A DNA stretch of 57,521 nt from Gracilinanus agilis. Lineage: Eukaryota. Under the pieces are notes generated by a model that saw only the letters and a program-made list of their open reading frames with translations, searched no databases and was not told where the DNA came from. Both the position numbers and the translations under genes were made by a program. Numbering within the stretch: position 1 is the stretch's first letter; each line of letters starts with the position of its first letter. The stretch is taken from positions 308,312,621 to 308,370,141 of the forward strand of contig NC_058134.1 in NCBI RefSeq assembly GCF_016433145.1. The letters run 5' to 3'. This document shows positions 13,724 through 57,052 of the stretch, piece after piece.

Positions 13724-13855
13724 ATGGCGATGGCGGGCGGCTGCGAGGGCGGTGAGGACTACCAGGCGTTCGTGGCACTGCACGGGCCGGCGCTGCGAGC
13801 CTCCGCCGTCCCCGAGCGCTACTGGGGCCGCCTCCTGCACAAGCTGCACCGCGAG
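13724..13855 (+). CDS. TTLL12: TTLL12 exon 1 (coding part)
   Basis: ATG at 13724 (second in-frame ATG at 13730); MAMAGG...LHKLHRE; donor GAG|GTGGGG. Confidence 0.9.
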
Positions 13856-16800
13856 GTGGGGACGCGGGGCCCTTGGGGGAGGGGCAGGCGAGCCGGGGGT
13901 GGAGCCGAGGACCCCCTGGATGGAGGGCTGGTCCCCTGTGCACGCACGCTTAGTAGGCGTCTGCTGTGTGCGGCTGGCCTACTACCAGCCAACCCCCCCC
14001 CCCGGGGGTGCCCTACGGATGAGAGGGGAAGGATGGAAGGTTGGGGGCCCCGGAGTGGGCTTTCCCCGGGAGGGGCATCAACTCCCCTACCGGGAGCAGC
14101 CTTAGGAGAGCCCCTGTGCCTGGTCCTGGGTTCTAGAGAGAAGCTTGGGCTTGTGCGGGCTGAAGGCCTGCAAGGTCCCGCCCTGGACCCCACGTGCTGC
14201 CTGTGTGGGGCCGGCCGGAGCCAGGACCGCAGCGACCTCGGACCTTTCAGCGCCCCAGCATTAGTCCCTGCGTGGGGCCGGGGGCACCTCACCCCAGTTA
14301 CTCAATTCAGTTCTTCCTGCCTGCGAACAAGTGGCTTCCTCCTCGGTCTCCATTTCCCTGGAGCTAAGTGACCCCTTGGGCTCCGGGCTAGGCCCCCAGT
14401 GCCTGGACCAGCCACATTGGTATAAAGTCATGCAGGAGGTTCCCCCCCCCCCGAAAAGGAGGCGGAGCTCCTCGGGGAGAATTGGGGTCCGTGGACCATT
14501 TAGTGGCACCCACGATGCCTTCCTGAGCTAGCCGCCTTGGGCACCTGGCCTTCCTGCCTCAGTTTCCTCCGCTGTCATATGGGCTCCCAGTATCGCCTGT
14601 TGTTGGGAGGACCAAGGGAGAGGACGGGTAAAGCCCTCATAGACCTGCCCGCAGCTGTAGACCGAAGGTGGGGCAGAAGCACGTTCAGGCAAGGCAGAGG
14701 CAGGCACCCTTCACTGCCCAGAGGCTCTGTGGACCTTTCCTGGGCGCGTCTGCCTTCACTTACAGAACCTGATGGGAGACCGAGGCTGCCACCCCACCCC
14801 CATGCTTTATGGTGGGAGGAAAGGGGACCGAAGAGGTCTTGGGGAGCCGAGGTTTTCCAAGTCCTACAGAAGCTGGGAGCCCCCTAACTGACTTGTGTGG
14901 AAGCCGGATTGATGCTGCCACCATGTCCCTATTTCTACCCTCTGAACTGGCTGGGCTGGCCTTCCAACTGGAGAGGCAGCAGGCACTGGGAGGGGCTCTG
15001 CAGCCAGGAAGAAGCTGAGGCTTGGGGCGGGCCTTGCTGCCGGCCACTGCTTTAGAGGGAAGAGGTGTGGTGTGGCTTGGCCCTAACCTGGGCTCCCTCC
15101 ACCCTCCCAGACAAACTAAAGGCCCTTTAAGAGGACTGAGTGGCCGCAGGCCAGGTAGGATCTTCCTGCTGCCGAGAACCTGTGCATTTTCCGGGAAAAA
15201 CACTCCGATTCTGGGGTATCTCGGCTTCTTAGACCCTTGTGGGAGCTCCTCCTCCTCCTCCTTTGAAAGCCTCTTGGAAGGAACCTTGGACTGCTTGTAA
15301 TTCAGCCTTCCCTTCCTCGTTTTCTGGTGGGCTTCCTGGAGGCCTGCTTCCCCTCCAGCCCGCAGAGAGCTGATTGAGGGCCTGGGATCCAGCGCCTGGG
15401 ATCCAGCCAGATTCCTTTTTCTAAAACCCTCTCTGGAAAGGTGTCTGTAATAGGATTAATTAGGGTAATTGCACTGATGACTCACTCCATCCACATTTAC
15501 CAATAGGACCTTGTTCCTCTTGAGCAGCTAAGTAAGCTCTGGGAGCTATTCTTGGCCACATGGTCTTGTGGCAAGATTCAGGCCGGAGCTGCGTTCGAAT
15601 CCCACCTCTAGCTCTACTTGATTGTTTGGCCATGGGCAAAATCATGTTCTGTCCCTGAACCTCTGTAAAGTCGGGTAGACCTATCAGTCTACCTCCCAGG
15701 ACTATCCATGTAAGGACGTGGTAATGGGCGGAAAGCCTTTGCCGGCTTGAAGAAGGTCAGGCAGCTCCTGGACCAGGCTGGGGAGCTGAGTGAGGTCCAG
15801 AGCACTAGGGAGAGAATCCCTCCCCAACAGCACAGCTTTTGTGGCTGACAATAAAACTCTGTGGCCTGGTGGATGTTGTGACGTTAAAGGAATCTTATTT
15901 GAAACTTGTAGGGTCCAAAATGGAAAGCCCCCAGAGCCCTGGGAACTTGCCCCCCAACAAAGTACATTGACTGGCTTCCCCTGGGAAAGACAAGGGAGGG
16001 GGGATAACCTTGATCTTTAGATAGCTGAAGGAAGATTCTGTGGCCAGAAGCTATAAGATAACTATGGATGGGAAACCAGCCAAGGCAGGGCTTGGAGACC
16101 TCCAACTAGATGATAAAACAATGTCTTTGAAACCCTGTCCTAGTGGTTAGAGACAGAAATGCAAAGCAGAGGAATGAGCCAGATATGGAAAAACCAGAAG
16201 TAATCCAAAGCCACAGTCTGGTGTTTGATAAGCCCGAGAACTTAAGGTGCTGGGGAGGGACCGCCTGGGATGGATAAGCACCAAGTCACTGAACTCGCAT
16301 TTATAAAGTACCTATTATGTGCTAAAAGGGGGGGGCAACATTTTCTGCCCCTGAAGATCTCACAGTCCATTGGGACAAACAAACATACAAACCACTGTAT
16401 AAACTAGAAAGAGACAGGCTCAGATAGGAATGCCCTCAGCCAGGAGGCACCAAGAGTGAGGGTGTGGGAAGGGCTCCCGAACGAGGGAGGTGAGGATGAG
16501 GAGGGAAGGCAGGTCAGGCTTGGCATTCCCTTATCAGGCTTTATAATGGGTTGTTTCCTGGATTTGGTTTCTTTTTCCATTCTTGTATTTCTTCAGCATC
16601 TTCTGCTTCCTCCACTTGCATGATAGCTAGGGATGGAGCATCCTGCCTGAGGAATAGCTCACTAGGAGTAGGCAGAAAGGGGTTGGGTCTTCAAGGGCTT
16701 TACAGGCCAAACTGAGGATTTGCTATTTGGCCCTGGAGGCGACAAGGAGCCACCACAGTTTATGGAATGGAGGTGACCCGGTCAGACCCGGACTTGAGGA

Positions 16801-19800
16801 AGATGAACTTGGTATGAGTGACTGGGAGCAGTAATAGAAAGGCGAGGCTGTAAAAGCCAGTCATTCTGATTGTTCAGAACTTGTTTTGAGTTCAGCTCTG
16901 ACTCATGTGGAAATCCAGCTCTCCAATGGCATATAGCCTGCTCCGGGACTTCCGTTTTCTGTAAAATGAGACGGTTGGAATCAATCATCTCAGTGATGGA
17001 TGCCTTCAAGCTCTGATAGTCTTTGATCTCTTGTGCAGTAGAGACAGTCTAGTCTGACCACGTCTAGTATCTTTTGCCTCTCGTACCCTTGACTGACTGG
17101 TACTTCCGATCTCAGATATTCGATGCTGGCGAGATGTTTGGAATCATGCAAGTGGAGGAAGTTGAGGAAGGTGAAGAAGGTGATGAAGAAATGCAAGAAG
17201 AATTGAAAAAGAAACCCAATCCAGGAAACGAACTCTGTTACAAAGTTATCGTGACCAATGAAAACGGCCTACAAGCAAACGATCCCAACAGGTAGGTTTC
17301 CGTTTTTGCCTTAAGGCTGGAGAATCTCACCTAGGCGTACACCCCTAGACTGGTACCATCCCATTGTCTGGGGACGTTTTCTACGGAGGGGCCTAAATGA
17401 AACTGTGTTTAGTTTGTGTCTAGTGGTAACAGCACACAGCTCATCCTGGGGTAATGAAGAAAGGAGAGGGTGATGACGAAAGATTCTCTTGGGTGTCTTT
17501 AGGAATACATGTCAAGGTGAAGATCGCCACTGACCTGAATCCTGAAGAAATGGGGGGGGGGAGGGGCTTGGCTGGGTGAAGGGTGCCAGATGCAGGAATT
17601 TGAAGGATGGAGATTTTTTCTGGTGATGAGGTTGTTTTCATTTGGAGAAAATGGGAAAAAGTAGTTCATGGAATGTTTTAAAAACCAGATTTCACAAACA
17701 GGAAAGGATATTTAGAGTGGATGGAAATGAGCAGCTCCCTTAGTTATAGCACAGTTGTGTATTTATGATAATCATTATTAACTTGAGAAAAAACCTTGAC
17801 TGGAGTTTGATAGAAATATCACTTGGGGCATTTCCTTTTCTGTTGTGAGCTCTGCCACTTTCTTTATTTACAAAGGCTGCAGTTCCTCCCTTCCCCCCCC
17901 CCCCCCCCAGCTGATTCGGCCTCCTCTCTCTTCAAGAAATGAAACTCCAATATTTGCCTTCCAGCAGCTCCTCCACTGACATTGCAGAGAAAATGGGAAA
18001 GGCTGCAGATTGAGATACGGTCTTGAATGCCAGGCTAAGAAATACACTTTTCTGGGTAGGTAGTGAGGACTTGAAGGAGTTTTGAGTAAAGGATTTGATG
18101 TGATCCTCTTTCGGGAAGTTTCGTCTTTTTTTCTGTAGTTATTCTTTAGATAGATAGTTTTCTGGGCAGAGGAGGGGGAAGGCTATATATTCGAGGTTGG
18201 CTTGGGGGAGTTGGTTTCGAGGGTGCTCTTTCTTTCTGAATGAATGCTTCATTTTTAGACTGTCACATTTTGAAGTTATATCAGCTTCCTTAATTAAGGG
18301 TGAGGAATTAGGGAAGACAAACTTATTACCTTAATTTAAAAAAAAAATCCAGCAGGAGCCAATGGGAGATTACTGGGAAGACATCGTTTCCACCCTGGAA
18401 ATAGAAAGCAGTCCTTCCAGAACCTTCCACCTTGGCTTTGGTGATCTGTCTTCTCTTAGGGCAAGAGCAGCCAAATACAGACCTGTGCAGACACACCAGT
18501 GTGGCAGTCAGCCAGCAAGCACCTACTGTGTCCTAGCAGAGAGCTGGCCCAGAAGCCTTTGAGGCCTGGCTGTCCCTCTTGCCTCTGACACATTGGGTCT
18601 ATGATTAGGTAATCGTGTGATCTCTCCGCTTCGCCAGCCTTTGCCAATAGATGGAGTTCCCTCACTTGGGAATCCTCTAAACCAGTGAGGTCACAGAACC
18701 AGGCCCTGGGCTTATATATGTCAAGGGAAACAACCTGCCAGGCATTCAGGGAGTAAGTGTTTTCTCTGGGTCAGGCACCATTCTAAGTGCTGTGGGCATA
18801 AAAAAGACTGAAGCCACCCCTTCCTGAAAGAGCTCCTGTGATAAGGAGGAAAACGGCAGACACAGAGTGTAGGTGAAAGGTAACCTCCCAGAGTGAAGAC
18901 TCCTGGAGTCGGAGCCAAGTTTTGAAGGAATCCAGTGAGTCTGGGAGGTGGAGAGAGATGACGGGGCATTCCAGGGATGGAGGACAGGCAGTGGCAGGGT
19001 ACAGATGTGGGCAGTAGAGTAGCAAGTGTTTAGCCGGGAGTTTTTATTTGTTAGTATTTTTTAGCCAGTGTTGTGGATCATAGAGTTCTTAGAGCAATGT
19101 GGAAGAAGGCTGGTGCTTCAGTGGGCTCTGGAGAGAGAAGGAGGAGATACGAGGCAGGTTTGCTGGGGAAGGGTTGGTTAGCAGCAGTGGAGTTGGTGTG
19201 TGAGTTGACCCTTGAGAGAAACTTGGCATCTTGAGAGAGCAGGCTAGGAAGAGAGTGTTCCAGGGCTGGGAGTCGGCCTAGACAGAGACACCAAGTCTAG
19301 CAGAAGCCCACGGGGGCTAGAATGGGGGGAGATGGCTGGGCCAAGATGGTGCCAGGTGCACACGTGATCCTAGAGGTAACAGCTAACCACTGCACTTTGC
19401 TGAGTGAAAAGGATGACGTGTAGGATTTACACTTCAGGAAAACCACCTCAGTAGCTGTGGGAGATAGACAGGAGAGGAGGGGAGGTGGAAGCATGGAGAC
19501 TGTTGAGGGCCTGCAGTAGGAAGGTGGCTATGGAATATCAAGGTTTGGTGACCAGAGGAACGTGTGGGATAAGGACGGGCTAGAGGACCTCCAGGATCAT
19601 CAGAGGAATGGTGAAAGTCTCGGCAGAAAGAGGGAGTTTGGAGGGCAGTGCAGAGATTTACTGAAGGAAGAGAAAGCGTTTTAGACGTGTTCTGGGTGTG
19701 AAGTTCCTCCACTAGTAACAGCCGACAGATGGCCAGGGCTGCTTGGGTAGATAAGCAGTGGGTGTGATTCCAGTTTGGCTGTTGTGGCCGGGGAAGCCAG

Positions 19801-22800
19801 GGTGAATGAGGGAATTTAGAAGAGAAAGACCTAGGGGGACAAGTAGAGTCCTGGAGGAGCACAGTGAGGAAAGGCCATAGAAAGTAGCCCTTCTCCTCGT
19901 GGGGCCGGGCAGAATGAGTGAGCAGACGAATGAATGAATGCCTTTGAGGGGGAGAGGAGGAATGAAGACGAGTAAAACTGGAAGGAATGAAGGAAGGATC
20001 AGAGGAGACAACAGGAGGATAATGGGAAATTCTACCTTGTCCCCCACCTGCCTTGCCCACAAAGTGGAAGACGGCACTGCCCCCAGGATAGCTTCCCCTG
20101 CAAAGGGCACCCAGTGCTGCTGCCGTGAGGCCCTGCCCTGCTCCTGGACTAGGCCTCACTGTGGGCACTCATGCCCACCTTGGGTGGTTTGTGGTGACTC
20201 AGAAGGGAGCACTGCTCCCTCTCAGTTCACTGTGAATGATGGGGCAGTCACCAGCCCCTCAGGCTGATATGGGGCATGGATAGTCGGTTACCCTCTGATT
20301 CCAGCCCCTACACCCCACCTGTGGTCCTTGGCCTTTCTCAGCTTTTCCTTTGCCCTTCCCCATTCCATCTTCCATTTCATCTCCCAAAGCCTTTTCCATA
20401 TTCGGTGTCCCTCAGGGCAAAGTGATGGTCAGTCTTGGGAGCTCAATGGTGTGAGCCACTTGGGTTCAGCATGACTGCGTGGAGCCTGACAGCAGGTTTT
20501 GTTTGTTTATTTTGAAGCATATTTCTCATTGACCATGCCTGGACATACCACATAGAACATGCCCGCCAACAGCTGCGCCAGGTTCCAGGGCTGCTACACC
20601 GAATGGCCAACTTGATGGGGATTGAATTTCATGGGGAAATTCCAGACGAGGGCTCTGTGGAGCTTGTTCTGGAAGAAATGTGGAAGTACAACCAGACTTA
20701 CCAGCTCTCCCAAGGGGTAAGACAGGCGGAGAGTGAGATACTCTTCGTTCTGAGTGTGGTGGACCATAAGGATGAATACTCGTGCCTTTTCCCTGTCCAT
20801 AAAGCAGCTAGGCCCCACCACCTCTCTCTCTCTCTTTCTCTCCCCTCTAAGCCATTGTTTGACAGATTGGGGGTCTGGCAACTCCTATAGGTCTCCCTTT
20901 AGTAGCCATCAGCCTGGGTTCATTCAGTCTCTAGAGCAGGGGTGTCCAAACTTTTTTGGCCTACCACCCCCTTTCCAGAAAAAATATTACTTAGCGCCCC
21001 CGTCCCATACTATCACCGCCCTCCTGGATCGCTGCAGCACCCACCAGGGGGTGGGGGCGCCCACTTTGGGAATCACTGCTCTAGGCACTGATCAGGGGAG
21101 ATGAAACGAAGGGGAGCTGGATCTCAGCGACAATTGTTGTTCTTCTTGGGTCCGAGTCCGAAGTTCCACCTGTATGCCTACTTCCCCAACTGACAGATTG
21201 CACCTCCCCACCTTAGCTGATGCTTTTTCACCCCTCACCATGGCCGCCTTCTGGAGCTGAGCCTCTCCTCCCCTATCGAGGCTGCTCCCCGAACTATCCA
21301 GCTGCCAGGCCTCTGCTTGAAACCTTTCCATTTTGATGGAATGCCCTTTACTCCAAGTGCATCACCTTCAGGAGCCCAGGATCCACCTTAGGTGGCCAAG
21401 GAAGGCTGTGGCGGAGGGATTCCCTAGTGGGGCAGTAACACGAGGACCTAGAGGACACACGACCCAGCTTTTGCTGAGGCATCAGTAGACAGCAGCTACA
21501 GGACACCTTCAGGAACATGATAGTTGTATTGTGAATTCCTAGGCTTGATAAGCCAGGGAGTTTTAGCCAGCTGGGTATTTTTTTTTCATTTTCCCACACT
21601 TGCTTCTATCAGAAGTGAAGGAGTCCTGGCAGTCAGTTGCCAGAATTCTGTTAGTGGTAGGAACCCTTCGTGCTTTTGAAAGTGTGTGGGCTGCTGACAG
21701 ACACAGCCTGTCTGCCCAAGTGAGGCGGAGGCGGAGGTGCCTGTGCACCTCAATGTCAGCAGCTCTGTGAGGCAGGTTTTATTTATCATTGTAGGACTAG
21801 CAAAGCAAAAAGTTCACTGTGGCCGGAGAGCAAAATTACTGCTATGCATGGAGTTTTCATTAAATAGAGAATGAGAAGAATTACTGCTCTAAAGCTCAAG
21901 AGAGTGCTCAAAAAGAAGGCCAGCCTTCCCCAAGCCCAGCCCCGAAGAGACTCCTCTGCTGGCCTTCTAGTGGGCTGCCTCTGCCCTCTACCTTCTAGCA
22001 GCCCCGCTTGGCTTCTGATGTGGAGCACTTGTCCTAGATTGTCCCCACCTAGATGCGGCCGTGTCCTCCTGTCTGTCCATGCCATGGAGGCACCCAGCCC
22101 TGGAGTCCGTGGCCCTGTCAGAAAAGGCACAGAAATCAGGCTTAGGTTTGGGGTGAGGATTATGTCTTGTCCCCTCCCGCCAAGCTCTTTACCAAGGACC
22201 GGTTTTGATCTGTGATTAACAGCAGTGGCATGTGTGCCCTCCATTGTGGCTGCTAAAGGAACTGGGTTGGACGTCCCGGGTCGGCTCTTCTTGGCTAGGG
22301 TCATTCTTTGCAGCCTTATCCATCTGCCTAGCGCAGGTTTTGCTCTAAGAAGTGGGCACTGGCACACCACTAAGGGCTCATTTGATTGTGATTGTGAAAA
22401 GCACTTTGTTGGAGTGGGATGAGAACCATCTTGCTTCTGTGTCTCAACCCCAGCCTAAAAGTTCTGAGGACACTTGTGTGCTAAGGTAGAAACAGCATCA
22501 CACTCGCAGTCAGAGCAAGGTTTGAAGCCAGCTTCTGGTGACCTTGGACAGATCATTAACCCCTTTGACCGTCAGTTCTCTGGCCTGTAAGACTGTCACT
22601 TTAACATCACTGGTTGCTTGAGAATCAAATGAGCTGGGAAATGGGGACTATTAGGCAGAGGGGATTCCCAGATGTGACTCCTCATTTCTCCAGTAGAGGC
22701 CAGCTCCTTCTCTGAAGCTGATTGGTTAGGAACTTGCCCAGAGTGCTGAGGGCTAACATTCAACACTGTATTATAAAGCAGTTTGTTAATGAAGACGTGT

Positions 22801-37265: not shown

Positions 37266-37476
37266 NNNNNNNNNNNNNNNNNNNNNNNNNNNNNNNNNNN
37301 NNNNNNNNNNNNNNNNNNNNNNNNNNNNNNNNNNNNNNNNNNNNNNNNNNNNNNNNNNNNNNNNNNNNNNNNNNNNNNNNNNNNNNNNNNNNNNNNNNNN
37401 NNNNNNNNNNNNNNNNNNNNNNNNNNNNNNNNNNNNNNNNNNNNNNNNNNNNNNNNNNNNNNNNNNNNNNNNNNNN
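37266..37476. other. Assembly gap (211 N) in the TTLL12 3' UTR
   Basis: Run of N. Confidence 0.99.
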
Positions 37477-43504: not shown

Positions 43505-43914
43505 ACGCTCTTCCCTCCTGTCTTAGAATCACTACTGTGTGCTGGCTCCAAGGCAGAAGGGCGGTCAGGGCTAGGCAATGGGGGTCAAGTGACTTGCCCA
43601 GGGTCACCCAGTGAGGAAGTGTCTGAGGCTACATTCGAACCCACATCTTCCTAACTCCAGGCCTGACTATCCATTGAGCCATTGAGCTACCCCAGCCCAA
43701 ATCTCCTTTTTTTTTTTTTTTTAAAACCCCCACCTTCCGTCTTGGAGTCAATACTGTGTATTGGCTCCAAGCAGAAGAGTGGTCAGGGTGGGCCATGGGG
43801 GTCAAGTGACTTGCCCAGGGTCACACAGCTGGGAAGTGTCTGAGGCAGGATTTGAACCCAGGACCTCCCGTCTCCAGGCCTGGCTCTCCATCCACTGAGC
43901 TACCCAGCTGCCCC
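43505..43914 (-). mobile_element. Two tandem SINE1_Mdo-like copies (older about 43505-43695; young 43707-43914)
   Basis: Young copy has TSD cccaaatctccttttt at 43696 and 43915. Confidence 0.85.
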
Positions 43915-45711
43915 CCCAAATCTCCTTTTTTAACCCTATTATGCTGGGAGAATCAGCGAAGGCCTGCTTCCGCTAGGGCTTGTTTCACCACCTCTCTGTG
44001 ATGCGGGGCTTTGCTGGCCTTTCAGGAGGCGCCAGACCCTTGCAGGCTGCAGCGACATATACGCTCTCCACCATTTTCCTGTGTCACCCCCACAGACCGC
44101 CACCTGGCGGGCACCCCGGACGTCTCTGCAGCACTCTGGAGGCTCCGAAGTTCTGTCCCTCTTTTTACTCCCCGTCTGCATGGAGGCAGAAGCCTCGCCG
44201 CAGGGGCCCCACGTTCTGTCCACGTCCTGTGTGGAGAGCTGCCGAGTGTGGCACGATTTTGGTCCCGGAAGTAGACGGCAAGTCTGCTAGTTTGTTCTTG
44301 TTCCGTCGGGTCTGACCTCCGTGACCCCGGGCGGGTGTTTCGGGGGCGAAGAGACTGGGGGGGCTGGCCATTTGCCTCCCCAGCTCACTGGACAGGGGAG
44401 GAAACTGAGGCAAAGAGGGTTCATTCAGTGACTTGTTCATGTCTTCCTCCCTCGAGCCCCAGTGCTTTATCCACAGGGCCACCTAGCTGCCCCCGACACT
44501 GGTATCACATAGTATAAACTGCTTTAAACTTTATCGCTCTTATTGCCGCTCTCAAGCCCGTTTTCCCAGAGGCCCCCTCTGGCTCTGGTGTTCTTCGACT
44601 TGGACTCTTCATTCGAGTTCCCATGAAGGAAAGATGCCAGCCTGCCCTCGCTGGGGCCCCGATGGGGCGGGGAGCACACGGGTCCCACTTTAGCTCTCTC
44701 TGCTCGGAGCCAGATTCACATCCCCACCGGATAATGAGGGGAGAGAGAGGATGACCCTATTGGAGCAGGAGGGAAGAGCTACGGGCCTGGCCATCAGCCC
44801 AGCCCAGCGACTGATGGGAAAATGCAAGAAGCTTCCTGCCCGCCCAGGCCTGCCCTCTGCCAAGGCCCTTCCCTCCACACAGGGAACTCTCACTTCTGCG
44901 GATCGAGGGCAGCCTGGGCAGTGGAGAGGGTGTCAAGACACGTGCGTGCCAGTCCTAGCTCCACCACGGACTCATGAGCAGCCTTAAGAATATGCCATCT
45001 CCTTGCTGGGCCTCAGTTTCCCCACCAATAAAAAAAAGGTGATCTCAAAGGGTCCTCCCAACCAGGAAGCTGCGAGGAGACTTCCCGGCTAGCTCAAATA
45101 TAGTTTTTAAATAAACAAGTTCCTGAATCTGCCTGCTGCCGCTCCCGAGCTCTTCCCCCCAAGCCTGGCTCGCCTCCTTCTTCCTTTCTCTCTCCTGAAC
45201 AGATTCCCTGAGCTCTAGGCAGCCCCTGGGCCTCCACTCCCTGTGCAAAAGATCATAAAAGCTCCCCCGCCTCCGGCTCGGCCTCTGCCTGCTGCCCAGT
45301 GCCAAGCCTGGGATGACTCTGCACATTTATCGGCCTGGGCTGGGGCCCCACCATTTGGTTTGTCCCAAGTCTCTGGAAGGATTCCTGGCATGAGGGTTTT
45401 CCCCCTGGCTTCCCTGGCTGGGCCCAGCCCTTCCTCCTGGAGCCTCACCTATAAAACAGGGACTTTTCTATCCCCACCCAACTCCCTCATGGCGCTGCGG
45501 GGAGACGCTGACACACACTGACTTCAAGAGTGGACAGGGCCCGGGGAAAGAGAGCAAGAGATGAGCGAGAGCCTCTCTTTGCCCCTCTGGGCCTCGGCTT
45601 CCTCCCCTGTAAAATGAGAAGGGCTCTTCTGGTTCTAAATAGCTCATCCCTTCCTTCTCTCTCCCTCCTTCCCTCCTTCCTTCTTGTCTTTCTTCCCTCA
45701 CCAAATATTGG

Positions 45712-45838
45712 TGCCAAGGCAAAAGAGTGGTAAGGTCTGGGCAACTGGGGTTAAAGTGATTTGTCCAGGGTGAAGATTTGAAGCCAGGACCTCCCATCTC
45801 TGGGCCTGGCTCTCTATCCACTGAGCCATCTAGCCACC
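45712..45838 (-). mobile_element. SINE1_Mdo-like partial copy
   Basis: gagtggtaagg...ggggttaaagtgatttg...ggacctcccatctctgggcctggctctctatccactgagcc. Confidence 0.7.
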
Positions 45839-46431
45839 CCGACAATGTCCTTTCTAAAACAGACATGATGCCAAGAACGGAACCCAGCCCTCCAGCTGAG
45901 CAGGGCAGAGGGCCCCCCGGTGCCAGCCTCTCTTAAAGCTTCTAGAGCAGCATTTGGCGCAATTGGGCATTAAGTGCTTCCTGCATGGAGGCAGAGACAT
46001 AATGGAAACATCCCTGGCCTCGGCCTCCAGTCTTGGGCGCAGAGGCCTTTGGGAAGAGCAGGAATGGGGCTCGTTAAGGCCAGCCCACAGTGTCACAGCA
46101 GGGGCTGCCCCAGGCTGCCAGTGTTTGCTTTCAGGGCCTGGAAGGGAAGGAAAGAACTCACTGGAGCTGGCTGGCTGGAGCCGGGCTGGAGCAGGGCAGG
46201 GCGGCTCCAGTTCCCTGAGGATGCACCTCGCAAAAAGTGTGGTGACTGGAGCTGTGTCTATCCCAGAACCTCAGAGCTCGGTGGGGCTCCAGAGGCTGCT
46301 GAGGCCCGCTCTGCCCGAGCCCGAAGGCCCTCCAGAGCCCCCTGTGATCTCGCCCCCCAATGCGGCTCCTCCCTTCTCCATCAGGGACTTTGGGGAAATT
46401 GGATCGTTTCTTCCCAGAAGGCTGACCGCCG

Positions 46432-46655
46432 TGGGCAGTGAAGGGGTGCCACAGTGCACAGAGTGCCAGCCTTGGAATCAGGAGTTCAAATCTGACCTCA
46501 GATACTTCTTAGCTGTGTGACCCTGGATGGATCACTTCACCCTGTTCCTCGTGCAAAATGAGCTGGAGAAGGAAAGGGTAAACCCTTCCGGTATCTTTGC
46601 CAAGAAAACCCCAAACGGGTCACAAAGAGATGGAGGTGACTGAAGGGACTGAACT
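46432..46655 (+). mobile_element. Mar1-like SINE
   Basis: tRNA head plus ctggagaaggaaagg...gtatctttgccaagaaaacccc tail. Confidence 0.65.
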
Positions 46656-47299
46656 GTTCCTGGTAGGTTACAAATAAAAACTGAAAGACAATCCCTGCCT
46701 TCAGGGAGCTCCAATTCTGCACAGCGCAATGGGAAGTATGTATCGAGATTCCTCCAAGTAGATACAAAGTGAAGGCGATACTCAGAGAAAGCGATAACAA
46801 AGTATCTTTGGGGGCTGCCGGGCCAGAAGGAGGCTAGGAAATCTACCAGGAAGAGTGAAGCAGCCCCCTGGGGCGGGGCAGATACTTCCTCCATACTCAC
46901 TCAGGAAGGAGCCGGACCCAGCCAGGGCATCAGCTCTTCCAGACCTCTGCTCAGGCCACTGAGACCTCCAGCTCTTCTTCACCCTCTAGGGAAGAGCTGG
47001 CTGCAAATCCGGTGTTCAGTCCCATACTTGTTCCCCGACTTTGGGGGGCCAAGCCTTGAGCTCCTCTGTTTCCCTCTTTCTGCCCTGGTGCCATGTGTGA
47101 CCCTGGGCAAGTCCCAGCCTCTCTGGGCCCATCGTCTTCCCAGTAAACCAGGCGTGGGAGAGCCCCAGCTCCGGCCTGCCCTTCCAGGAAGTTTGCCAAG
47201 AGCAGAGCAGAGCAGAGGGCCCCTGCCAGGGCTCCGGAGGCTGCCAGCCAGGCCAGGCTCTAGGAGGAGCTTCGGAGGGGACTGAAGGTAAGCTCACCC

Positions 47300-48050
47300 T
47301 CCGCCCCTGCAGCCAGCATTGCTCTGGGCTGCCAGCCGGGCCCCTAGAACCAAGGAGACTCTCAGCCGGGCATCTGGGCCAGCCTCGGCGGGACGCAGAC
47401 AGCTCCTGTTCGAACTCGGGCCAGGGCCGGGGAACTCACTACCTCCGGAGCCGGGCCGGCTCGGAGTGCTGGGGAGCTTGGGGCGGCCTGGGCGCTGGCT
47501 CGCCTCATCTGGCCTCCGCCACGGTCCCCGGCAGCCCGGCCATTTCCCAAGCCCTTCCTTCCTCCAGTTACCTACCGTGGGGCTCCGGAGGGAGAGCGGG
47601 CAGGCGGGGGAGGGCCGCTGCTGTGTCCGGGCGATGCCCTCTGAGCGGTGCCGCACAGAATCTCGGCAGAGCGGCGGAAGCGCTTAGAGATCCTCACACC
47701 CACGGCCCCACTCTGCAGATTAGACAGATGAACGGAGGCGGGCCGAGGGGGAAGGCAAACTGAGGCTCGGCCTTCGGGCGGGGCGGGGCCGGGGATGGGC
47801 GGCTCACTCACCAGAGGCGCCGCGGAGGCCGCCGGGCCCGCCCCCAGCCAGCGGCCCGCCCAGCCCTGCCCTCCCGAGTCCGGGCCGGCCCAGAGGCCGC
47901 CCGCTGGCTGCCGAGCCCGGTTTGGGGGCCCCATCAGAGGTCTCCCCGTGAAGGGGACTCCCGGAGGAAGCCATGCCCGCCCCTTGCCCGGGGTCACACG
48001 GGGACTTCCCCTGAGCCCCGCTGCTCTCCCCTCTCCGCCTGGCCATAAAA
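47300..48050. promoter_or_regulatory. TSPO CpG-island promoter region
   Basis: CpG-dense block with tandem GC boxes at 47776-47790, 4.1-4.9 kb upstream of TSPO exon 2; boundaries approximate. Confidence 0.75.
47576..47690 (-). other. TSPO: Probable non-coding TSPO exon 1 (TSS not determinable)
   Basis: Donor ACG|GTAGGT at 47576/47575 on minus strand inside a CpG island, with an ETS-like GCGGAAG near 47674 and GC boxes near 47776-47790 upstream. Eutherian TSPO has a non-coding exon 1. Other donors exist at 47812 and 47298. Confidence 0.5.
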
Positions 48051-48769
48051 TGGGACTGAAACCCAGCCTGGGGCTCAGAGGGAAGCGGGGCTCCCGCCCT
48101 GTCCTGCTCCCCCACCTCATCTCCAACTGCTCTCTGGTCTGCTGCGGCTCTCCCAGGCGCCCCCTCCTCACTCTAAAACCCTGGAGCTCCTCGTTTTACA
48201 GAGGAGTAAACTGAGTCACCCAGGCAGGGGGAGCAGGACCCAGGTCGTGCTGTTGGAGCAGCTAGGCAAGCACAGGCCTGGAGCTGGAAGGACCTGGGTT
48301 CAAGGGTGACCTCAGGCTGTGTGGCCCTGGACCAATCACTTCCCCTCTCATTGCCTAGCCCTTCCCACTCTTCTGCCTCAGAACTAATACTTAGTATTGA
48401 CGTGTGCACCGACTGGTCCTGTGAGCCTGTGGCCAGACTTTGCTTAAGGACCCCCATGGAGCAGGCACTGGGTTCATTCGGCTTTGGGCTCTCCGCTCCC
48501 CCAGCTAACCCCCTGCCAATTGGGAAACAGTTCTCCGCCATTCAGCTCTGCAGGCCAAACAGCCCACATTCCTCCACAGACCCCGGGCTCTCCTCCAGGG
48601 GCCCATTCTGGGCAAGGAAAGCTGACCGGACCGGTTCAGCATCAGGAATGAGAGGATTTCATGGCATTAAAGAAGAGGTGCTGCCCCCTGAGGCCGCTGG
48701 CCTGCAACTAAAACCTTCCCGACCAGTTGTCTCCCCCAGGCCAGAGACTGACTTTTCTCTTTGTGTTTC

Positions 48770-48955
48770 TTTTTTTTTTTAAACCCTTAACTTCTGTGTA
48801 TTGGCTCCAAGGCAGAAGAGTGGTCAGGGTGGGCCATGGGGGTCAAGTGACTTGCCCAGGGTCACACAGCTGGGAAGTGGCTGAGGCCGGATTTGAACCT
48901 AGGACCTCCCATCTCTAGGCCTGACTCTCCATCCACTGAGCTACCCAGCTGCCCC
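48770..48955 (-). mobile_element. Young SINE1_Mdo-like copy between the TSPO and MCAT promoters
   Basis: TSD ttctctttgt(g/a)tttc at 48755 and 48956. Confidence 0.88.
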
Positions 48956-49689
48956 TTCTCTTTGTATTTCATGTTTAGCACCAGGCTTGGCACAAAAGAA
49001 GTGCTTAGTAAACACTTCTGTTCATTCAACTGATCACAGAGGGATGTTGGGCATCATCAGAACTGGGTTCGAATCCTGACCATACTATACCATACTATTT
49101 GTATGATCTTGGAGTCCTCAGTTTTCTGATCTGCAAAATGGATCAGATGATCCTCGAGATCCCTTTCTAGTGGAAATCGGTGCTCCCGGACCTCGAACAC
49201 AATGATGAATTTTTAGAGATTTTTCTGGTCCAGACCCAACAAGCGACCGACTAGGAGGACTGTGAGGTGCTCCGCGCCACACCCCAAACGAGTCAAGGGC
49301 AGAATGAAGAAGGACTCCCATGTACAGCCTTCTACTTTTTCCAAAGGTAGGCACTAGGTGGTGCCATGGCGCATGAAGAGCCAGGCCTGAGTTGAAATTG
49401 GACATCAGACATTAGCTGTGTGAGCCTGGGCAAGTCATTTCGCCCTTAGTTTGCCTCAGTTTCCACGTCCGTGAAATGACGGTATCAGACTAGCTGGCTT
49501 CCGAGGTTCCTTCCAGCCCTAGGGTCGGGCTGCGTCACTGACGTGCTGTGTGACCTGGGGTGACTGTCTTGACCTGCCAAATCCCACTGGCTGCAGGGAA
49601 GGGGGCGCTTCGAAAACCTTGAAGCGCTACAGAAGTTGGGGCTGTCACTTATTATATCATTAAAATGCATCATATTTATTATCATTGTT

Positions 49690-49791
49690 GATACGTGTAA
49701 AATCCAGTGGAATTGCGCGTCGGCCACGGGGAGGGAAAGAACATGAGTCGTGTAACCGTGGGAAAATATTCGAAAAAAGAAAAATAACTAA
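49690..49791 (+). mobile_element. Extremely 5'-truncated LINE-1 (about 102 bp) in the MCAT promoter
   Basis: Homologous to the L1 3' end at about 290-400; A-rich tail; 18-bp TSD atat(t/c)tattatcattgtt at 49672-49689 and 49792-49809. Confidence 0.85.
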
Positions 49792-49809
49792 ATATCTATT
49801 ATCATTGTT

Positions 49810-50460
49810 AAGGAGAGGGCGCTGTGAGGAGGAGGAACGTTTCTGCCGGACTCTGGTTTCTCCGTACGACGGTCGGACCGAGCTGTGCGCGCACCCACGC
49901 GGCGCGTCGGGAGTTGCTAGACAACGGGCGCGGGGGCGGGGACGGCGTAGGCGGCGGCGGCGTCTGTCATGGCGGCCCCCATCCGACTTCGGCTTAGCGC
50001 CGGGACAGCCGGCGCGCCCTGGCGGCGCCTCTGGTCCTCGCAAGCTCGGGACCCCGCGGGGCCGCCGCCGCCATCTGAGGTGGTGGACGTGGCGGCGCTG
50101 CTGAATGACGCCTCGGTGGGCTCGAGCCCGAGGCACAGGCCTAGCTCTCGGCCGAGCCCCCAGGCCACCTCAGTGCTGCTCTTCCCCGGCCAGGGCAGCC
50201 AGGTCGTGGGCATGGGGCGCGCGCTTCTGCAATACCCGGGCGTGCGCACGCTCTACGACGTCGCCGGGCGCGCGCTGGGCTATGATCTGCTTCAACTGAG
50301 CCTACAAGGGCCGAGCAAGGAGCTGGAACGCACAGTCCGTTGTCAGCCGGCGCTCTACGTGGTCTCGCTCGCCGCCCTGGAAGCGCTGCGGCACCAGCGG
50401 CCCGAGGTAAGCCCCGCCCCCCGCCCCAGCAAGTAGTAGTTGCGCATGCTCAGGCATTTG
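49810..50460. promoter_or_regulatory. MCAT CpG-island promoter with NRF1-like motifs
   Basis: CpG-dense; TGCGCGCA at 49886-49893; TGCGCATGCTCA at 50441-50452 (11/12 to the NRF1 palindrome TGCGCATGCGCA). Confidence 0.8.
49969..50406 (+). CDS. MCAT: MCAT exon 1 (coding part)
   Basis: gtcATGG start; ends GAG|GTAAGC. Confidence 0.94.
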
Positions 50461-53400
50461 GCTTCCTTTCCTGGCCGCCCTACCCACCGAGGTGTAGCCT
50501 CAGTCTGCACTTCTGTACAATGGGGGCAACAGGTACAGCTGACCTGGGCTGGAGGCTTTGGGGAGGTGGATGATGAGTAAAGCGCTTTGTAAACAAATCA
50601 GGGCCCGAGGAATGTCAGAGGAAGGAAAGACCGAGCCTCCTCTCCTCCAGCACCTCTACAGAGAGGAGAACATGGGTTCAAATCCCACCCCGGATGCTTA
50701 CTCCCCGTGTGACCTTGACCAGTCCCTTTCTTTCCTCTGGGCCTCAGTTTCCTCCACGGTAAAGTAGGGGAGTTGGAACTGGTGGCCTTGGAGGTCCCTT
50801 CCATCTTTAGAACTGGACCTTGGTTATCCCTTCTGTGTAATGGGGAAAGAGAAATTGGACCCTGAATGTTGACCTCCGAGGTCTCAGGACTATGCAGCTG
50901 CCTCTAGACCAAGAAGAACCTGATTCTGTGTCTAATCCCCCTGGTGCTGCAGAGTGTTGGGGGCACCAAAAGCACTTAATCCAAAATCTCTCTTATCTTT
51001 TCTTTGGGAAAACCCCTCGTCTAGTGGAGACCTCCCTTTGTTCCTCTTTCCCCTCCATCTGATCAGAGATTTTCCCAGAAGGAGGAAAAACTAACTTTGG
51101 ATTATCAGTTCTTTTTGAATTTTTGTAGGATTTTCAAACCCAAGACTAGGTGGTGTTTCTCCCATCCTGTCTAGGGGGCACCCACTATGGTCAGAACTGT
51201 TTATTGATAAAGCAGGAGTTCCAAGCTGCTATGATGTTCTTTGCTCTCGAGGCTCCAGGAGGATTAAATGGGGAAGTCAGGTTTGGAAGACTGAGAACCT
51301 TTGAGTTGGAAGGCTCCTAGGTATAGTGCTAGAAGGGATCTAGAGCCCAGAGTCTGAATTTCCAACCCTTTGTTTAATGCATGAATTGAGATGGACAGAT
51401 CAGCAAAGGGAAAAAAGGAAGGAAAGAAGGAGGCATTCGAGGTTATGGGACCTATCAGGCAGTGGGAAGTGATCAGTCGAGGGAGGGAGGAGTAGAAGGG
51501 GCATTGGGGAGGCAGCTGGGTGGCTCAGTGGATTGAGAGCCAGGCCCAGAGATGGGAGGTCCTGGGTTCCAATCTGACCTCAGATACTTCCTAGCTGTGT
51601 GACCCTGGGCAAGTCACTTAACCCCCATTGCCTAGCCCTTACCACTCTTCTGCCTTGATTCTAAGATGGAAGGTAAGGGTTTTAATAATTAAAGAAGAGG
51701 AAGAAGAAGGGACATTGGAATGATTGACAGATGAGGGAGTAAAGGGGAAAAGTCCTCTTCAGCGCTATGAAGGTTTCCATATTAGCAACTTCCCCACATC
51801 CCCATGATGGATGTTTCTCTTCTGTAGTCTCTCCTTTTGGTTTATCCTCTCTTACGTGGTCCAGGCATCAGTCAATAACAAACATCTGGTAAATACTTAT
51901 TAGGTGCCAGGCACAGTGTAAAGAGCTAGAGACAGAAATAGACCAAAAGAATCCAGCCTCTGCCCTCGGGGAGCTTACGTTCTAATCAGCTGGGCAAGGG
52001 CCATAGAGGCAGAGGGACGCTAGGGTGAGCAGAGAATCCAGATGAGGGCTGTGAAGAGGGCTTCATTCTGTGCTAGAGAAGTCAGTCCCCTTGCAGCGTT
52101 CCCAAGAAGGGGTCCCATCCAGGCTGGGGGCCTACCCTCCTCACGGGAGCACAGGATTCCTTGCTGCTCACATGAGCCTCAGGACCCTGTGTCAGATTGG
52201 GCTCCAGCTGGTTATTCAGAGCCTGTTTTCAAGGCCTGACTTTGTGCTGTACATCTCTCACCACAGGTTATTGAGACTTGTGTTGCTGCGGCTGGATTCA
52301 GTGTGGGAGAGTTTGCAGCCCTTGTGTTTGCCGGTGCCTTAGAATTTGAAGAAGGTACTCTGGATGTTTGCTGGATTTTACCCTGGGGACGGGGCCAGCA
52401 GGGGGTTTGTGCCATTGTTTGAAGTGACCCTGAATTACACAGTGAGCCTGCCTTGAGAGTAAGAGGGTAGAGTCGGGAAGAAGTAGAGTGGAGTGGGCAG
52501 AGCCCTGGACCCAGAACAGCTGCTTTCAGTTTCTGGCTCTGATTCTTGCCAGCACTTGGAGCCCAGGCCTCGGGTTCTTAATCTATAATACGGTGGTCGT
52601 AGAGAGAGGAGAGAGGTAGCATAGCAATGTATTGAGAGCTGACCCGGGAGCCAGGAAGCCCTGAGGCCTGCCCTGCCCTGACACCCTGTGGGGTAGGGGT
52701 CAGAGGTGACCCAGGTAATATCCCCCCAACACTGATGAAGTCATTTGTGTGAACCAAAACAGAAACCAGTCGAGGAATCCTAAATGTCAAGGTCCTTTGT
52801 TCCTCTCCCATCTGCCACATGCTCTTATCCTGTCTCAGGTCCTATCTCAGCAAATGCATGAATTCAGTGGGGCCCGGCACTGTGAATGTGGCTCAACTTG
52901 CCTTCTGGGTTCTCTTCCAGCCCCACCTTCCTTAGTTTCCTTCCATTGCCTCTGCTTGGAGAAGCCCTCCCCACCCTGTGTATCTGCACTGCGTACCTCT
53001 TCTCCCATGCACTGTCTCTGTCTCTGTGTCGCCCTCTTTCCCTGTCCCCTGTTCCCTCCCTCCCTCCCTCCCTCTCTCCTCTGATGACCCCCCTCCACCC
53101 TGAACAGCCCTCCCTTTTGACTCCCCTGTGCCATCCAGCTCCTAGGTGCCCTCTCCTCCCCATCGCTGCTGAACTCCTTGTGTGTCCTGTTGGGGACAGA
53201 GGGGGCAGCTAGAGAGGCAGTGCTCAGGCTGGACCACTTCACTTCCATAGGTCCCTCCTGGCTCTGAGAGTCTGTCGTTCCACAGGGAAATGAAGGGCCG
53301 AGTCTACAGAACTGAAAACCACCCTCCTGTGCTTAGGCTCATCTGCTTCCTCAGTTTCTCCCCTCTCCAGTCCAGCCTCTGCTCTGCTTCCAAGGTGATC

Positions 53401-56755: not shown

Positions 56756-57052
56756 GGCAGCCAGGCTTCCATGAGTATGAGGAGAGAAAGAAGGCTGGGG
56801 TGAAGAGTGGGCAGATGCTCAACAACAGAGCAGGGCCCCTAGGAAAAAGGGGTCAAGATGCCCTCAAAGGACAAGCCCAGCAGGAGATTCTGTTGGGCCT
56901 GCTGGCTGCGTCCAACAGTTTCCATTGGCTTTTCTCTTTGTTTCTAGTACTCTGGACCCCTTTTTCCTAGGGGCCCTGCTCTGTTGTTGAGCATCTGCCC
57001 ACTATTCACCCAGCATTCTTTCTCTCCTCATACTCATGGAAGCCTGGCTGCC
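56756..57052. repeat. Inverted repeat: arms 56756-56854 and 56955-57052, spacer 100 bp
   Basis: Arms differ by 2 substitutions and 1 indel, with perfect blocks of 49 and 37 bp. Confidence 0.95.

What the first reader, a model, noticed from the sequence alone, without database searches (positions are those of the whole stretch)
16539..17245. Inverted copy of TTLL12 exon 2 sits in intron 1 and can fold back onto the exon
Seen: the reverse complement of 16539-16624 matches exon 2 positions 17143-17245 at 77/86 nt. Its two larger deletions (12 and 3 nt) are in-frame, and the copy would read [24 protein letters not shown]. Three of the nine mismatches become G-U pairs in RNA. The 518-nt loop contains the exon 2 branch point and acceptor, and the paired part covers the GAA-rich acidic stretch. 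Established: intron-exon duplexes act as editing-complementary sequences for ADAR, and purine-rich GAA tracts are typical SR-protein enhancers. Inference: the duplex could drive A-to-I recoding (GAA/AAA codons) or promote exon 2 skipping. Skipping (176 nt) shifts frame and hits TGA four codons into exon 3 (CAT ATT TCT CAT TGA), which would give a self-encoded off-switch. I do not recall this element in the human gene. It may equally be a neutral duplication scar.
Basis: partly seen in the sequence, partly recalled or inferred. Interest (0 to 1): 0.8.

Follow-up and report, generated by a model that had tools for sequence, protein, structure and literature searches.

The report
Inverted exon-2 copy in opossum TTLL12 intron
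A roughly 97-base insertion in intron 1 of the agile gracile opossum TTLL12 gene carries a backwards copy of part of exon 2 that could pair with the exon in the pre-mRNA, but it looks like a decaying opossum-specific copying accident, and no editing or splicing role could be shown.

Summary
The reverse complement of 16539-16624 matches exon 2 positions 17143-17245 at 77/86, with gaps of 12, 3, 1 and 1 nt. The pair is unique in the window, and the homology stops at the arm ends. Folding predicts an 84-bp duplex (-113.5 kcal/mol) that persists in 0.8-kb and 2.1-kb contexts.

The window is Gracilinanus agilis TTLL12. Exon 2 is really 17116-17291.

Koala, Dromiciops and Sarcophilus align across a clean empty site, so about 16531-16627 is an insertion. 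The copy shares a derived G (17154) with the G. agilis exon, so the insertion arose on the opossum branch.

The copy carries 7 of the 9 substitutions and all four gaps. The two exon-side changes are uncompensated. In a related opossum (coded organism C, probably Monodelphis) only the right 26 nt of the copy align.

Six RNA-like runs hold every exon-internal 31-mer unchanged. Exon 2 is therefore included and is not majority-edited. Low-level editing and skipping could not be tested.

Best reading: a templated inverted insertion decaying at about the neutral rate. It is at most an incidental ADAR substrate.

The parts
16539..16624 (-). Inverted copy of an internal segment of TTLL12 exon 2; this is the intronic arm of the predicted duplex
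   Evidence: 77/86 identity to 17143-17245 with four gaps. The pair is unique in the window.
16531..16627 (.). The whole inserted block (about 97 nt, boundaries uncertain by about 3 nt): the 86-nt copy plus 8 nt and 3 nt of unmatched filler
   Evidence: Alignment A2 shows an empty site in koala L006, Dromiciops L003 and Sarcophilus L004, with alignable flanks on both sides.
17143..17245 (+). Exonic arm and template, encoding [34 protein letters not shown]
17116..17291 (+). TTLL12 exon 2 (176 nt)
   Evidence: AG/GT boundaries are seen in the sequence, and the translation equals the G. agilis TTLL12 protein P0318.
16625..17142 (+). 518-nt loop holding the 3' end of intron 1 (branch region, weak pyrimidine tract, AG) and the first 27 nt of exon 2
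13724..13855 (+). Coding part of exon 1, ending in phase 0 with a GT donor at 13856
20518..20716 (+). Exon 3; read directly after exon 1 it gives HISH*
16553..16596 (+). Pyrimidine-rich sense reading of the copy, ending in CAG: a look-alike of a 3' splice site
   Evidence: Read directly from the sequence. It was not tested with RNA.

Best explanation
A roughly 97-nt block was inserted into intron 1 of TTLL12 on the opossum (Didelphimorphia) branch. It contains a reverse-complement copy of about 103 nt from inside exon 2, which lies about 520 nt downstream. The likeliest origin is a replication or repair template switch, in which a nascent strand briefly copied the nearby exon in the opposite orientation. 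That mechanism is inferred. Since then the copy has drifted at about the neutral intronic rate. In Gracilinanus agilis the two arms can still form a long, imperfect duplex of 84 predicted pairs in the pre-mRNA. ADAR enzymes would plausibly edit such a duplex at a low, incidental level, and this too is inferred. Nothing indicates that the duplex is maintained by selection, that it recodes TTLL12, or that it controls exon 2 inclusion.
For: Shown. (1) The window is G. agilis TTLL12: its exons match protein P0318. (2) The only exon-2 match in the TTLL12 loci of Dromiciops, Sarcophilus and koala, and in contigs of a bird and another sauropsid, is exon 2 itself. (3) The intron flanks of the three australidelphians align across a clean gap that matches 16531-16627. 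(4) The copy and the G. agilis exon share G at 17154, where all five outgroups have A, so the copy was made after the split from Australidelphia. (5) Outgroups assign 7 of the 9 substitutions to the copy and 2 to the exon (17217, 17241). The copy side also has four gaps, while the exon has the same length as the Sarcophilus and koala exons. (6) Both exon-side changes leave C:U and C:A mismatches that the copy did not compensate. (7) The copy-side rate of 7/86 (8.1%) is close to half of the divergence of at least 12.7% between G. agilis and organism C in alignable intron pieces. (8) In DNA contigs of organisms C and D the orthologous contig aligns 16417-16454, then 16599-16652, then 16898-17028. 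Only 26 nt of the copy align at 80% or better. (9) Runs X2-X4 and X39-X41 of the same organism hold shares of 0.19 and 0.87 of the sampled words. Those shares equal the exon-internal fraction of the two query stretches. The mature RNA therefore contains exon 2 with the genomic sequence. (10) Template switching is documented as a source of new inverted repeats and RNA hairpins (PMC5453318, PMC8794818).
Against: The duplex is very stable and dominates the predicted ensemble, so some molecular effect is hard to exclude. All three copy-side transitions preserve pairing as G:U, but the chance probability is about 0.07, so this is only a weak hint. RNA evidence is indirect: read laying returned no exon-2 coverage from the two RNA-like runs, probably because conserved, human-like records are filtered. 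Logan contigs also drop minor variants, so low-level editing or NMD-sensitive skipping would be invisible. The state of the copy in organism C is inferred from alignment pieces, not read from sequence. No microhomology was seen at the junctions, and both the size and the distance exceed typical short template switches.
Confidence: 0.65

Rival explanations
1. The copy is a newly born editing-site complementary sequence. The exon-intron duplex recruits ADAR, and specific adenosines in the acidic and lysine-rich linker of TTLL12 are recoded in didelphids.
For: The predicted duplex has 84 pairs and is interrupted by bulges, as selective ADAR substrates are. The exonic arm has 46 adenosines, of which 40 face U. 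24 of the 46 have a favourable 5' U or A neighbour, and 11 of those 24 would be nonsynonymous: I>V, M>V, K>R/E, N>S/D, Y>C. ADAR preference for long dsRNA is documented, including in opossum (PMC5625713).
Against: All exon-internal 31-mers are held unchanged in six RNA-like runs, so majority editing is excluded. 13 of the 24 best-context sites are synonymous third positions of GAA, CAA or AAA codons. The only A:C mismatch has its A on the intron arm, at 16543. There is no covariation, and the copy appears truncated in organism C. Opossum brain had the lowest hyper-editing yield among the mammals in the part of the paper's table that I read (PMC5625713). The library holds no report of TTLL12 editing.
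Confidence: 0.13
2. The duplex modulates splicing. It could sequester the GAA-rich exonic enhancers and loop out the weak 3' splice site, which would promote exon 2 skipping followed by frameshift and NMD. Alternatively it could mask the cryptic acceptor that the copy itself creates.
For: The loop holds the branch region and the AG, and the arm covers the purine-rich tract. Skipping gives a stop in the fifth codon of exon 3. On the sense strand the copy is a roughly 40-nt pyrimidine tract ending in CAG, with a GTATGAGT sequence at 16812.
Against: Exon 2 is present in all six RNA-like runs. The only G. agilis TTLL12 protein among the marsupial cluster members (P0318) contains exon 2. The element is not conserved. 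No junction reads could be obtained, so nothing positive supports this reading.
Confidence: 0.1
3. The copy is an assembly artefact, or a fragment of a retrocopy or transposable element.
For: None beyond the general possibility.
Against: An independent Logan assembly holds 100% of the sampled words. Contigs of organisms C and D carry the right end of the copy at the same place. The copy is internal to one exon, with no exon-exon junction and no poly-A tail, and there are only two copies in the window.
Confidence: 0.02

Closest known systems
Template-switch mutations that create inverted repeats and RNA hairpins (four-point model; Loytynoja and Goldman 2017, PMC5453318; Monttinen and Loytynoja 2022, PMC8794818)
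   Same: A reverse-complement copy of nearby sequence from the same locus appears as a clean insertion relative to outgroups. It instantly creates a long, near-perfect stem.
   Different: This event is larger (86-97 nt) and further from its template (about 520 nt) than the short-range events those studies describe. No junction microhomology was seen, and 8 nt and 3 nt of filler flank the copy. One arm is coding.
ADAR editing-site complementary sequences, that is exon-intron duplexes such as GRIA2 Q/R and R/G (from general knowledge)
   Same: An intronic sequence complementary to a coding exon in the same pre-mRNA is predicted to form an imperfect duplex with bulges.
   Different: No editing has been shown here. 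The element lies upstream rather than in the downstream intron. It is clearly derived from the exon by duplication. It is lineage-specific and decaying rather than conserved.
Inverted SINE or Alu pairs in introns, the bulk ADAR substrates that also affect splicing and back-splicing (PMC5625713)
   Same: Two inverted homologous segments lie within one pre-mRNA and form long dsRNA. Such pairs also occur elsewhere in this window.
   Different: The arms here are not transposable elements. One arm is a constitutive coding exon, so any editing would persist in the mRNA.

Membership tests
ADAR exon-intron editing duplex (ECS) | An intronic segment complementary to the exon in the same transcript forms a stable duplex | tested here: met
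   84 predicted pairs at -113.5 kcal/mol. The duplex is present in the minimum-energy and centroid folds, and block mean pair probabilities are 0.64-0.99. This is prediction only.
ADAR exon-intron editing duplex (ECS) | A-to-I (A>G) RNA-DNA differences in the paired exon | tested here: inconclusive
   Read laying gave no exon-2 coverage from runs X2 and X3. The word index shows that all exon-internal 31-mers are unedited in six RNA-like runs. That excludes majority editing only.
ADAR exon-intron editing duplex (ECS) | The duplex is conserved, with compensatory change, across species | tested here: not met
   The element is absent from koala, Dromiciops and Sarcophilus. Only 26 nt align in organisms C and D. 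The two exon-side changes are uncompensated.
Template-switch inverted insertion | A reverse-complement copy of a nearby segment of the same locus | tested here: met
Template-switch inverted insertion | A derived state relative to outgroups, with an empty ancestral site | tested here: met
   Alignment A2 shows a clean gap in three australidelphian orders. The copy and the exon share the derived G at 17154.
Template-switch inverted insertion | A single event with switch points consistent with the four-point model; microhomology is often present | tested here: inconclusive
   No microhomology is evident at either junction, and filler of 8 nt and 3 nt is present. The age of the event and later substitutions blur the junctions.
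Inverted transposable-element pair | The arms belong to a dispersed repeat family | tested here: not met
   There are only two copies in the window, and one of them is the orthologous exon 2 of all vertebrate TTLL12 genes.
Processed pseudogene fragment | Spliced exon-exon junction, poly-A tail or target-site duplication | tested here: not met
   Homology is confined to the interior of exon 2, and none of these marks is present. An RNA template for so short a piece cannot be excluded.

The most novel reading that the evidence does not exclude
This is an editing-site complementary sequence caught at birth. A single template-switch event in the didelphid lineage would have created, in one step, a working exon-intron ADAR substrate that recodes the acidic/lysine linker of TTLL12 at low to moderate level in some tissues. 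That would show directly how recoding sites can arise without stepwise evolution of a complementary intron.
Probability: 0.1. Interest if true: 0.7.

Novelty: new member of a known kind. Interest (0 to 1): 0.35.

Why it matters
How the intronic partners of ADAR recoding sites arise is poorly documented. Here the origin of an exon-intron duplex can be read directly. The template is identifiable, the empty ancestral site is visible in three marsupial orders, and substitutions can be assigned to the copy or the exon. If raw RNA-seq showed editing, this would be a natural example of a recoding substrate made in one mutational step. If not, it is a clean, datable example of a mid-sized templated inverted insertion and of how quickly such a hairpin decays without selection. 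It also shows that the antisense of a purine-rich exon is a ready-made splice-acceptor look-alike.

Tried and rejected
- RNA evidence. The single read-laying run placed no record of the two RNA-like G. agilis runs on exon 2, although the index says they hold it. The tool filters conserved, human-like records. Editing and junctions therefore could not be read.
- Monodelphis DNA. The look-up of encoding contigs had no record for isoform X2. For isoform X1 it returned no DNA because the sample's file is too large. The same happened for G. agilis, wombat and Trichosurus. Only coded contig pieces were available.
- Short ORFs of exon 2 in the protein collection returned only sauropsid and eutherian contigs, with no marsupial.
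- Extension of the copy into flanking intron or exon sequence: none.
- Known RNA family: only a chance-level miRNA match, E = 0.84 and 19.8 bits against a threshold of 63.
- Literature: no report of TTLL12 editing and no paper on an exon-duplication origin of an ECS in the held library.
- The fact that all three copy-side transitions give G:U was considered as a sign of selection. It was rejected as not significant (about 0.07 by chance).
- The in-frame sizes of the gaps were rejected as meaningful, because the copy is an untranslated antisense intronic sequence.
Full report
**Observation.**
The window was read at 16400-17400. Exon 17143-17245 matches 16624-16539 at 77 of 86 aligned positions, with gaps of 12, 3, 1 and 1 nt, all missing from the copy.

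The ungapped repeat finder sees the same pair as two overlapping inverted repeats. The two best-conserved cores each occur exactly twice in the window, where shuffles give 0.00-0.03. Sensitive BLAST of the surrounding 3 kb shows no homology beyond the arm ends, and a search with the copy finds no third copy in the window.

The copy reads [24 protein letters not shown] followed by NPL*. An independent Logan assembly of a DNA run of the same organism holds all sampled words of 16500-17300, so the structure is not an assembly error.

**Gene and species.**
Exon 3 (20519-20716) was used to reach TTLL12 proteins. A full-length representative then led to the marsupial clusters.
- The N-terminal sequence of the Gracilinanus agilis protein P0318 is identical to the window's exons 1-3, and Monodelphis differs.
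- tblastn places all 14 exons between 13.7 and 37.1 kb.
- Exon 1 coding sequence is 13724-13855 and ends in phase 0.
- Exon 2 is 17116-17291, flanked by AG at 17114-17115 and GT at 17292-17293.
- Exon 3 is 20518-20716.

**Fold.**
- The 801-nt stretch 16500-17300 folds with the two arms paired in both the minimum-energy and the centroid structure. The z-score is -6.6 against 20 shuffles.
- The arms alone form 84 pairs (48 A-U, 29 G-C, 7 G-U) at -113.5 kcal/mol.
- In a 2.1-kb context the block means of pair probability are 0.99, 0.84, 0.72, 0.64 and 0.72.

These are equilibrium predictions. They take no account of proteins or of co-transcriptional splicing.

**Origin.**
The TTLL12 loci of Dromiciops (L003), Sarcophilus (L004, L005) and koala (L006), and contigs of a bird (L001) and another sauropsid (L002), contain exon 2 once and no inverted copy.

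The intron around the copy can be aligned with the three australidelphians. The multiple alignment shows conserved flanks on both sides of a clean gap corresponding to about 16531-16627. The block is therefore an insertion of about 97 nt: the 86-nt copy plus 8 nt and 3 nt of unmatched filler.

The copy and the G. agilis exon share G at 17154 (GTG), where koala, Dromiciops, Sarcophilus and both sauropsids have A. This places the event on the opossum branch rather than making it a loss in Australidelphia.

A reverse-complement copy of a nearby segment is what template switching in replication or repair produces. That process is documented as a source of new inverted repeats and RNA hairpins (PMC5453318; PMC8794818). 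The present event is larger and more distant from its template than the short events described there. I saw no junction microhomology, so the mechanism is inferred, not shown.

**Evolution since the event.**
- With the outgroups as reference, 7 of the 9 substitutions lie on the copy and 2 on the exon (17217 A>C and 17241 T>C).
- The G. agilis exon has the same length as the Sarcophilus and koala exons, so the four gaps are losses or skips on the copy side.
- Both exon-side changes leave mismatches (C:U and C:A) that the copy has not compensated.
- Three copy-side transitions give G:U and four transversions break pairs. All three transitions being pair-preserving has a chance probability of roughly 0.07, which I do not count as evidence.

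**Evidence from public runs.**
DNA contigs of a related species were laid on 16400-20800 at 80% likeness.
- The species is coded organism C. Its exon 2 carries the M>V change at 17191 that is typical of the Monodelphis protein.
- Organism D shows all six of the exon-2 differences listed for C, so it is not independent of C.
- Alignable intron pieces differ from the window by about 12.7% (107 of 844 positions). This is a lower bound, and it makes the copy-side 8.1% (7/86) compatible with neutral drift from somewhat before that split.
- The orthologous contig aligns 16417-16454, then 16599-16652, then 16898-17028.
- The right 26 nt of the copy are thus present in organism C, so the insertion predates the split.
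- The left 60 nt of the copy, together with 76 nt of ancestral flank, do not align.
- That flank is alignable even with australidelphians, so a deletion in the organism C lineage is the likeliest reading. The tool does not say what lies between the pieces.
- Either way, the long duplex is not maintained in that relative.

**RNA.**
The two RNA-like runs of G. agilis put no record on exon 2 in read laying. The tool warns that conserved, human-like records are filtered, so this says nothing.

The word index is informative.
- Runs X2-X4 hold 0.19 of the sampled words of the 801-nt stretch.
- Runs X39-X41 hold 0.87 of the sampled words of the 201-nt stretch.
- These values equal the shares expected for words lying wholly inside the 176-nt exon.
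- Exon 2 is therefore present, without its intron flanks, and with the genomic sequence, in six runs.
- This excludes majority-level editing and constitutive skipping. It does not exclude minor editing or NMD-sensitive skipping.

**What editing could do.**
- The exonic arm has 46 adenosines, of which 40 face U.
- 24 of the 46 have a 5' U or A neighbour. 13 of those 24 are synonymous third positions of GAA, CAA or AAA codons, and 11 would recode.
- The only A:C mismatch, the most favourable ADAR context by general knowledge, has its adenosine on the intronic arm at 16543.
- Opossum brain gave the lowest hyper-editing yield among the mammals in the part of the survey's table that I read. The same survey ties hyper-editing to long, nearly perfect dsRNA (PMC5625713).
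- No TTLL12 editing is reported in the held library.

**Verdict.**
It is best explained as a didelphid-specific, templated inverted insertion of exon-2 sequence that is decaying without detectable constraint.

Its capacity to form a strong pre-mRNA hairpin is genuine, and incidental low-level ADAR editing is plausible. A regulated recoding or off-switch function is unsupported, and the comparative pattern speaks against it. Raw-read RNA-seq and the intron sequences of other didelphids would settle the matter.

Noticed in passing
window 16553-16596 (+), 16812-16819 (+): On the pre-mRNA strand the copy reads as a roughly 40-nt polypyrimidine tract ending in CAG (AG at 16595-16596). This is a much stronger acceptor look-alike than the real exon 2 acceptor. 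A GTATGAGT donor look-alike follows at 16812. A 215-nt cryptic exon at 16597-16811 would hit TGA at its ninth codon. The fold-back would mask this acceptor.
   Followed up: no
window 56756-57052: A second local, non-TE inverted repeat lies downstream of MCAT, with arms of 44 nt at 98% and 61 nt at 97% complementarity. It is possibly another product of the same kind of template switching.
   Followed up: partly
window ~14040-14100 and 14668-14772 (+): ORFs in intron 1 resemble the alternative 5' exons of Monodelphis TTLL12 isoforms X4 (MREEGWKVGG...) and X1 (VGQRHVQARQ...). G. agilis may use the same alternative first exons. All of them lie upstream of the copy.
   Followed up: no
window 16694-16728: A roughly 35-nt piece attracts many organism C contigs with loose ends on both sides, at word depth 98.7 against about 20 nearby. 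It is probably a fragment of a dispersed repeat.
   Followed up: no
window 43799-51657: Several inverted pairs of a SINE-like element (core GGGTCAAGTGACTTGCCCAGGGTCACACAGCTGGGAAGTG...GGATTTGAAC) lie 2-3 kb apart. These are the ordinary kind of intragenic dsRNA source.
   Followed up: no
window 17170 and 17191: Two lineage-specific A>G genomic substitutions fall in the exonic arm: D>G (GAT>GGT) in G. agilis, and M>V (ATG>GTG) in organisms C and D. The sample is too small to read as hard-wiring of edited sites.
   Followed up: no
window 37266-37476: A 211-nt run of N begins about 180 nt after the last TTLL12 coding exon.
   Followed up: no
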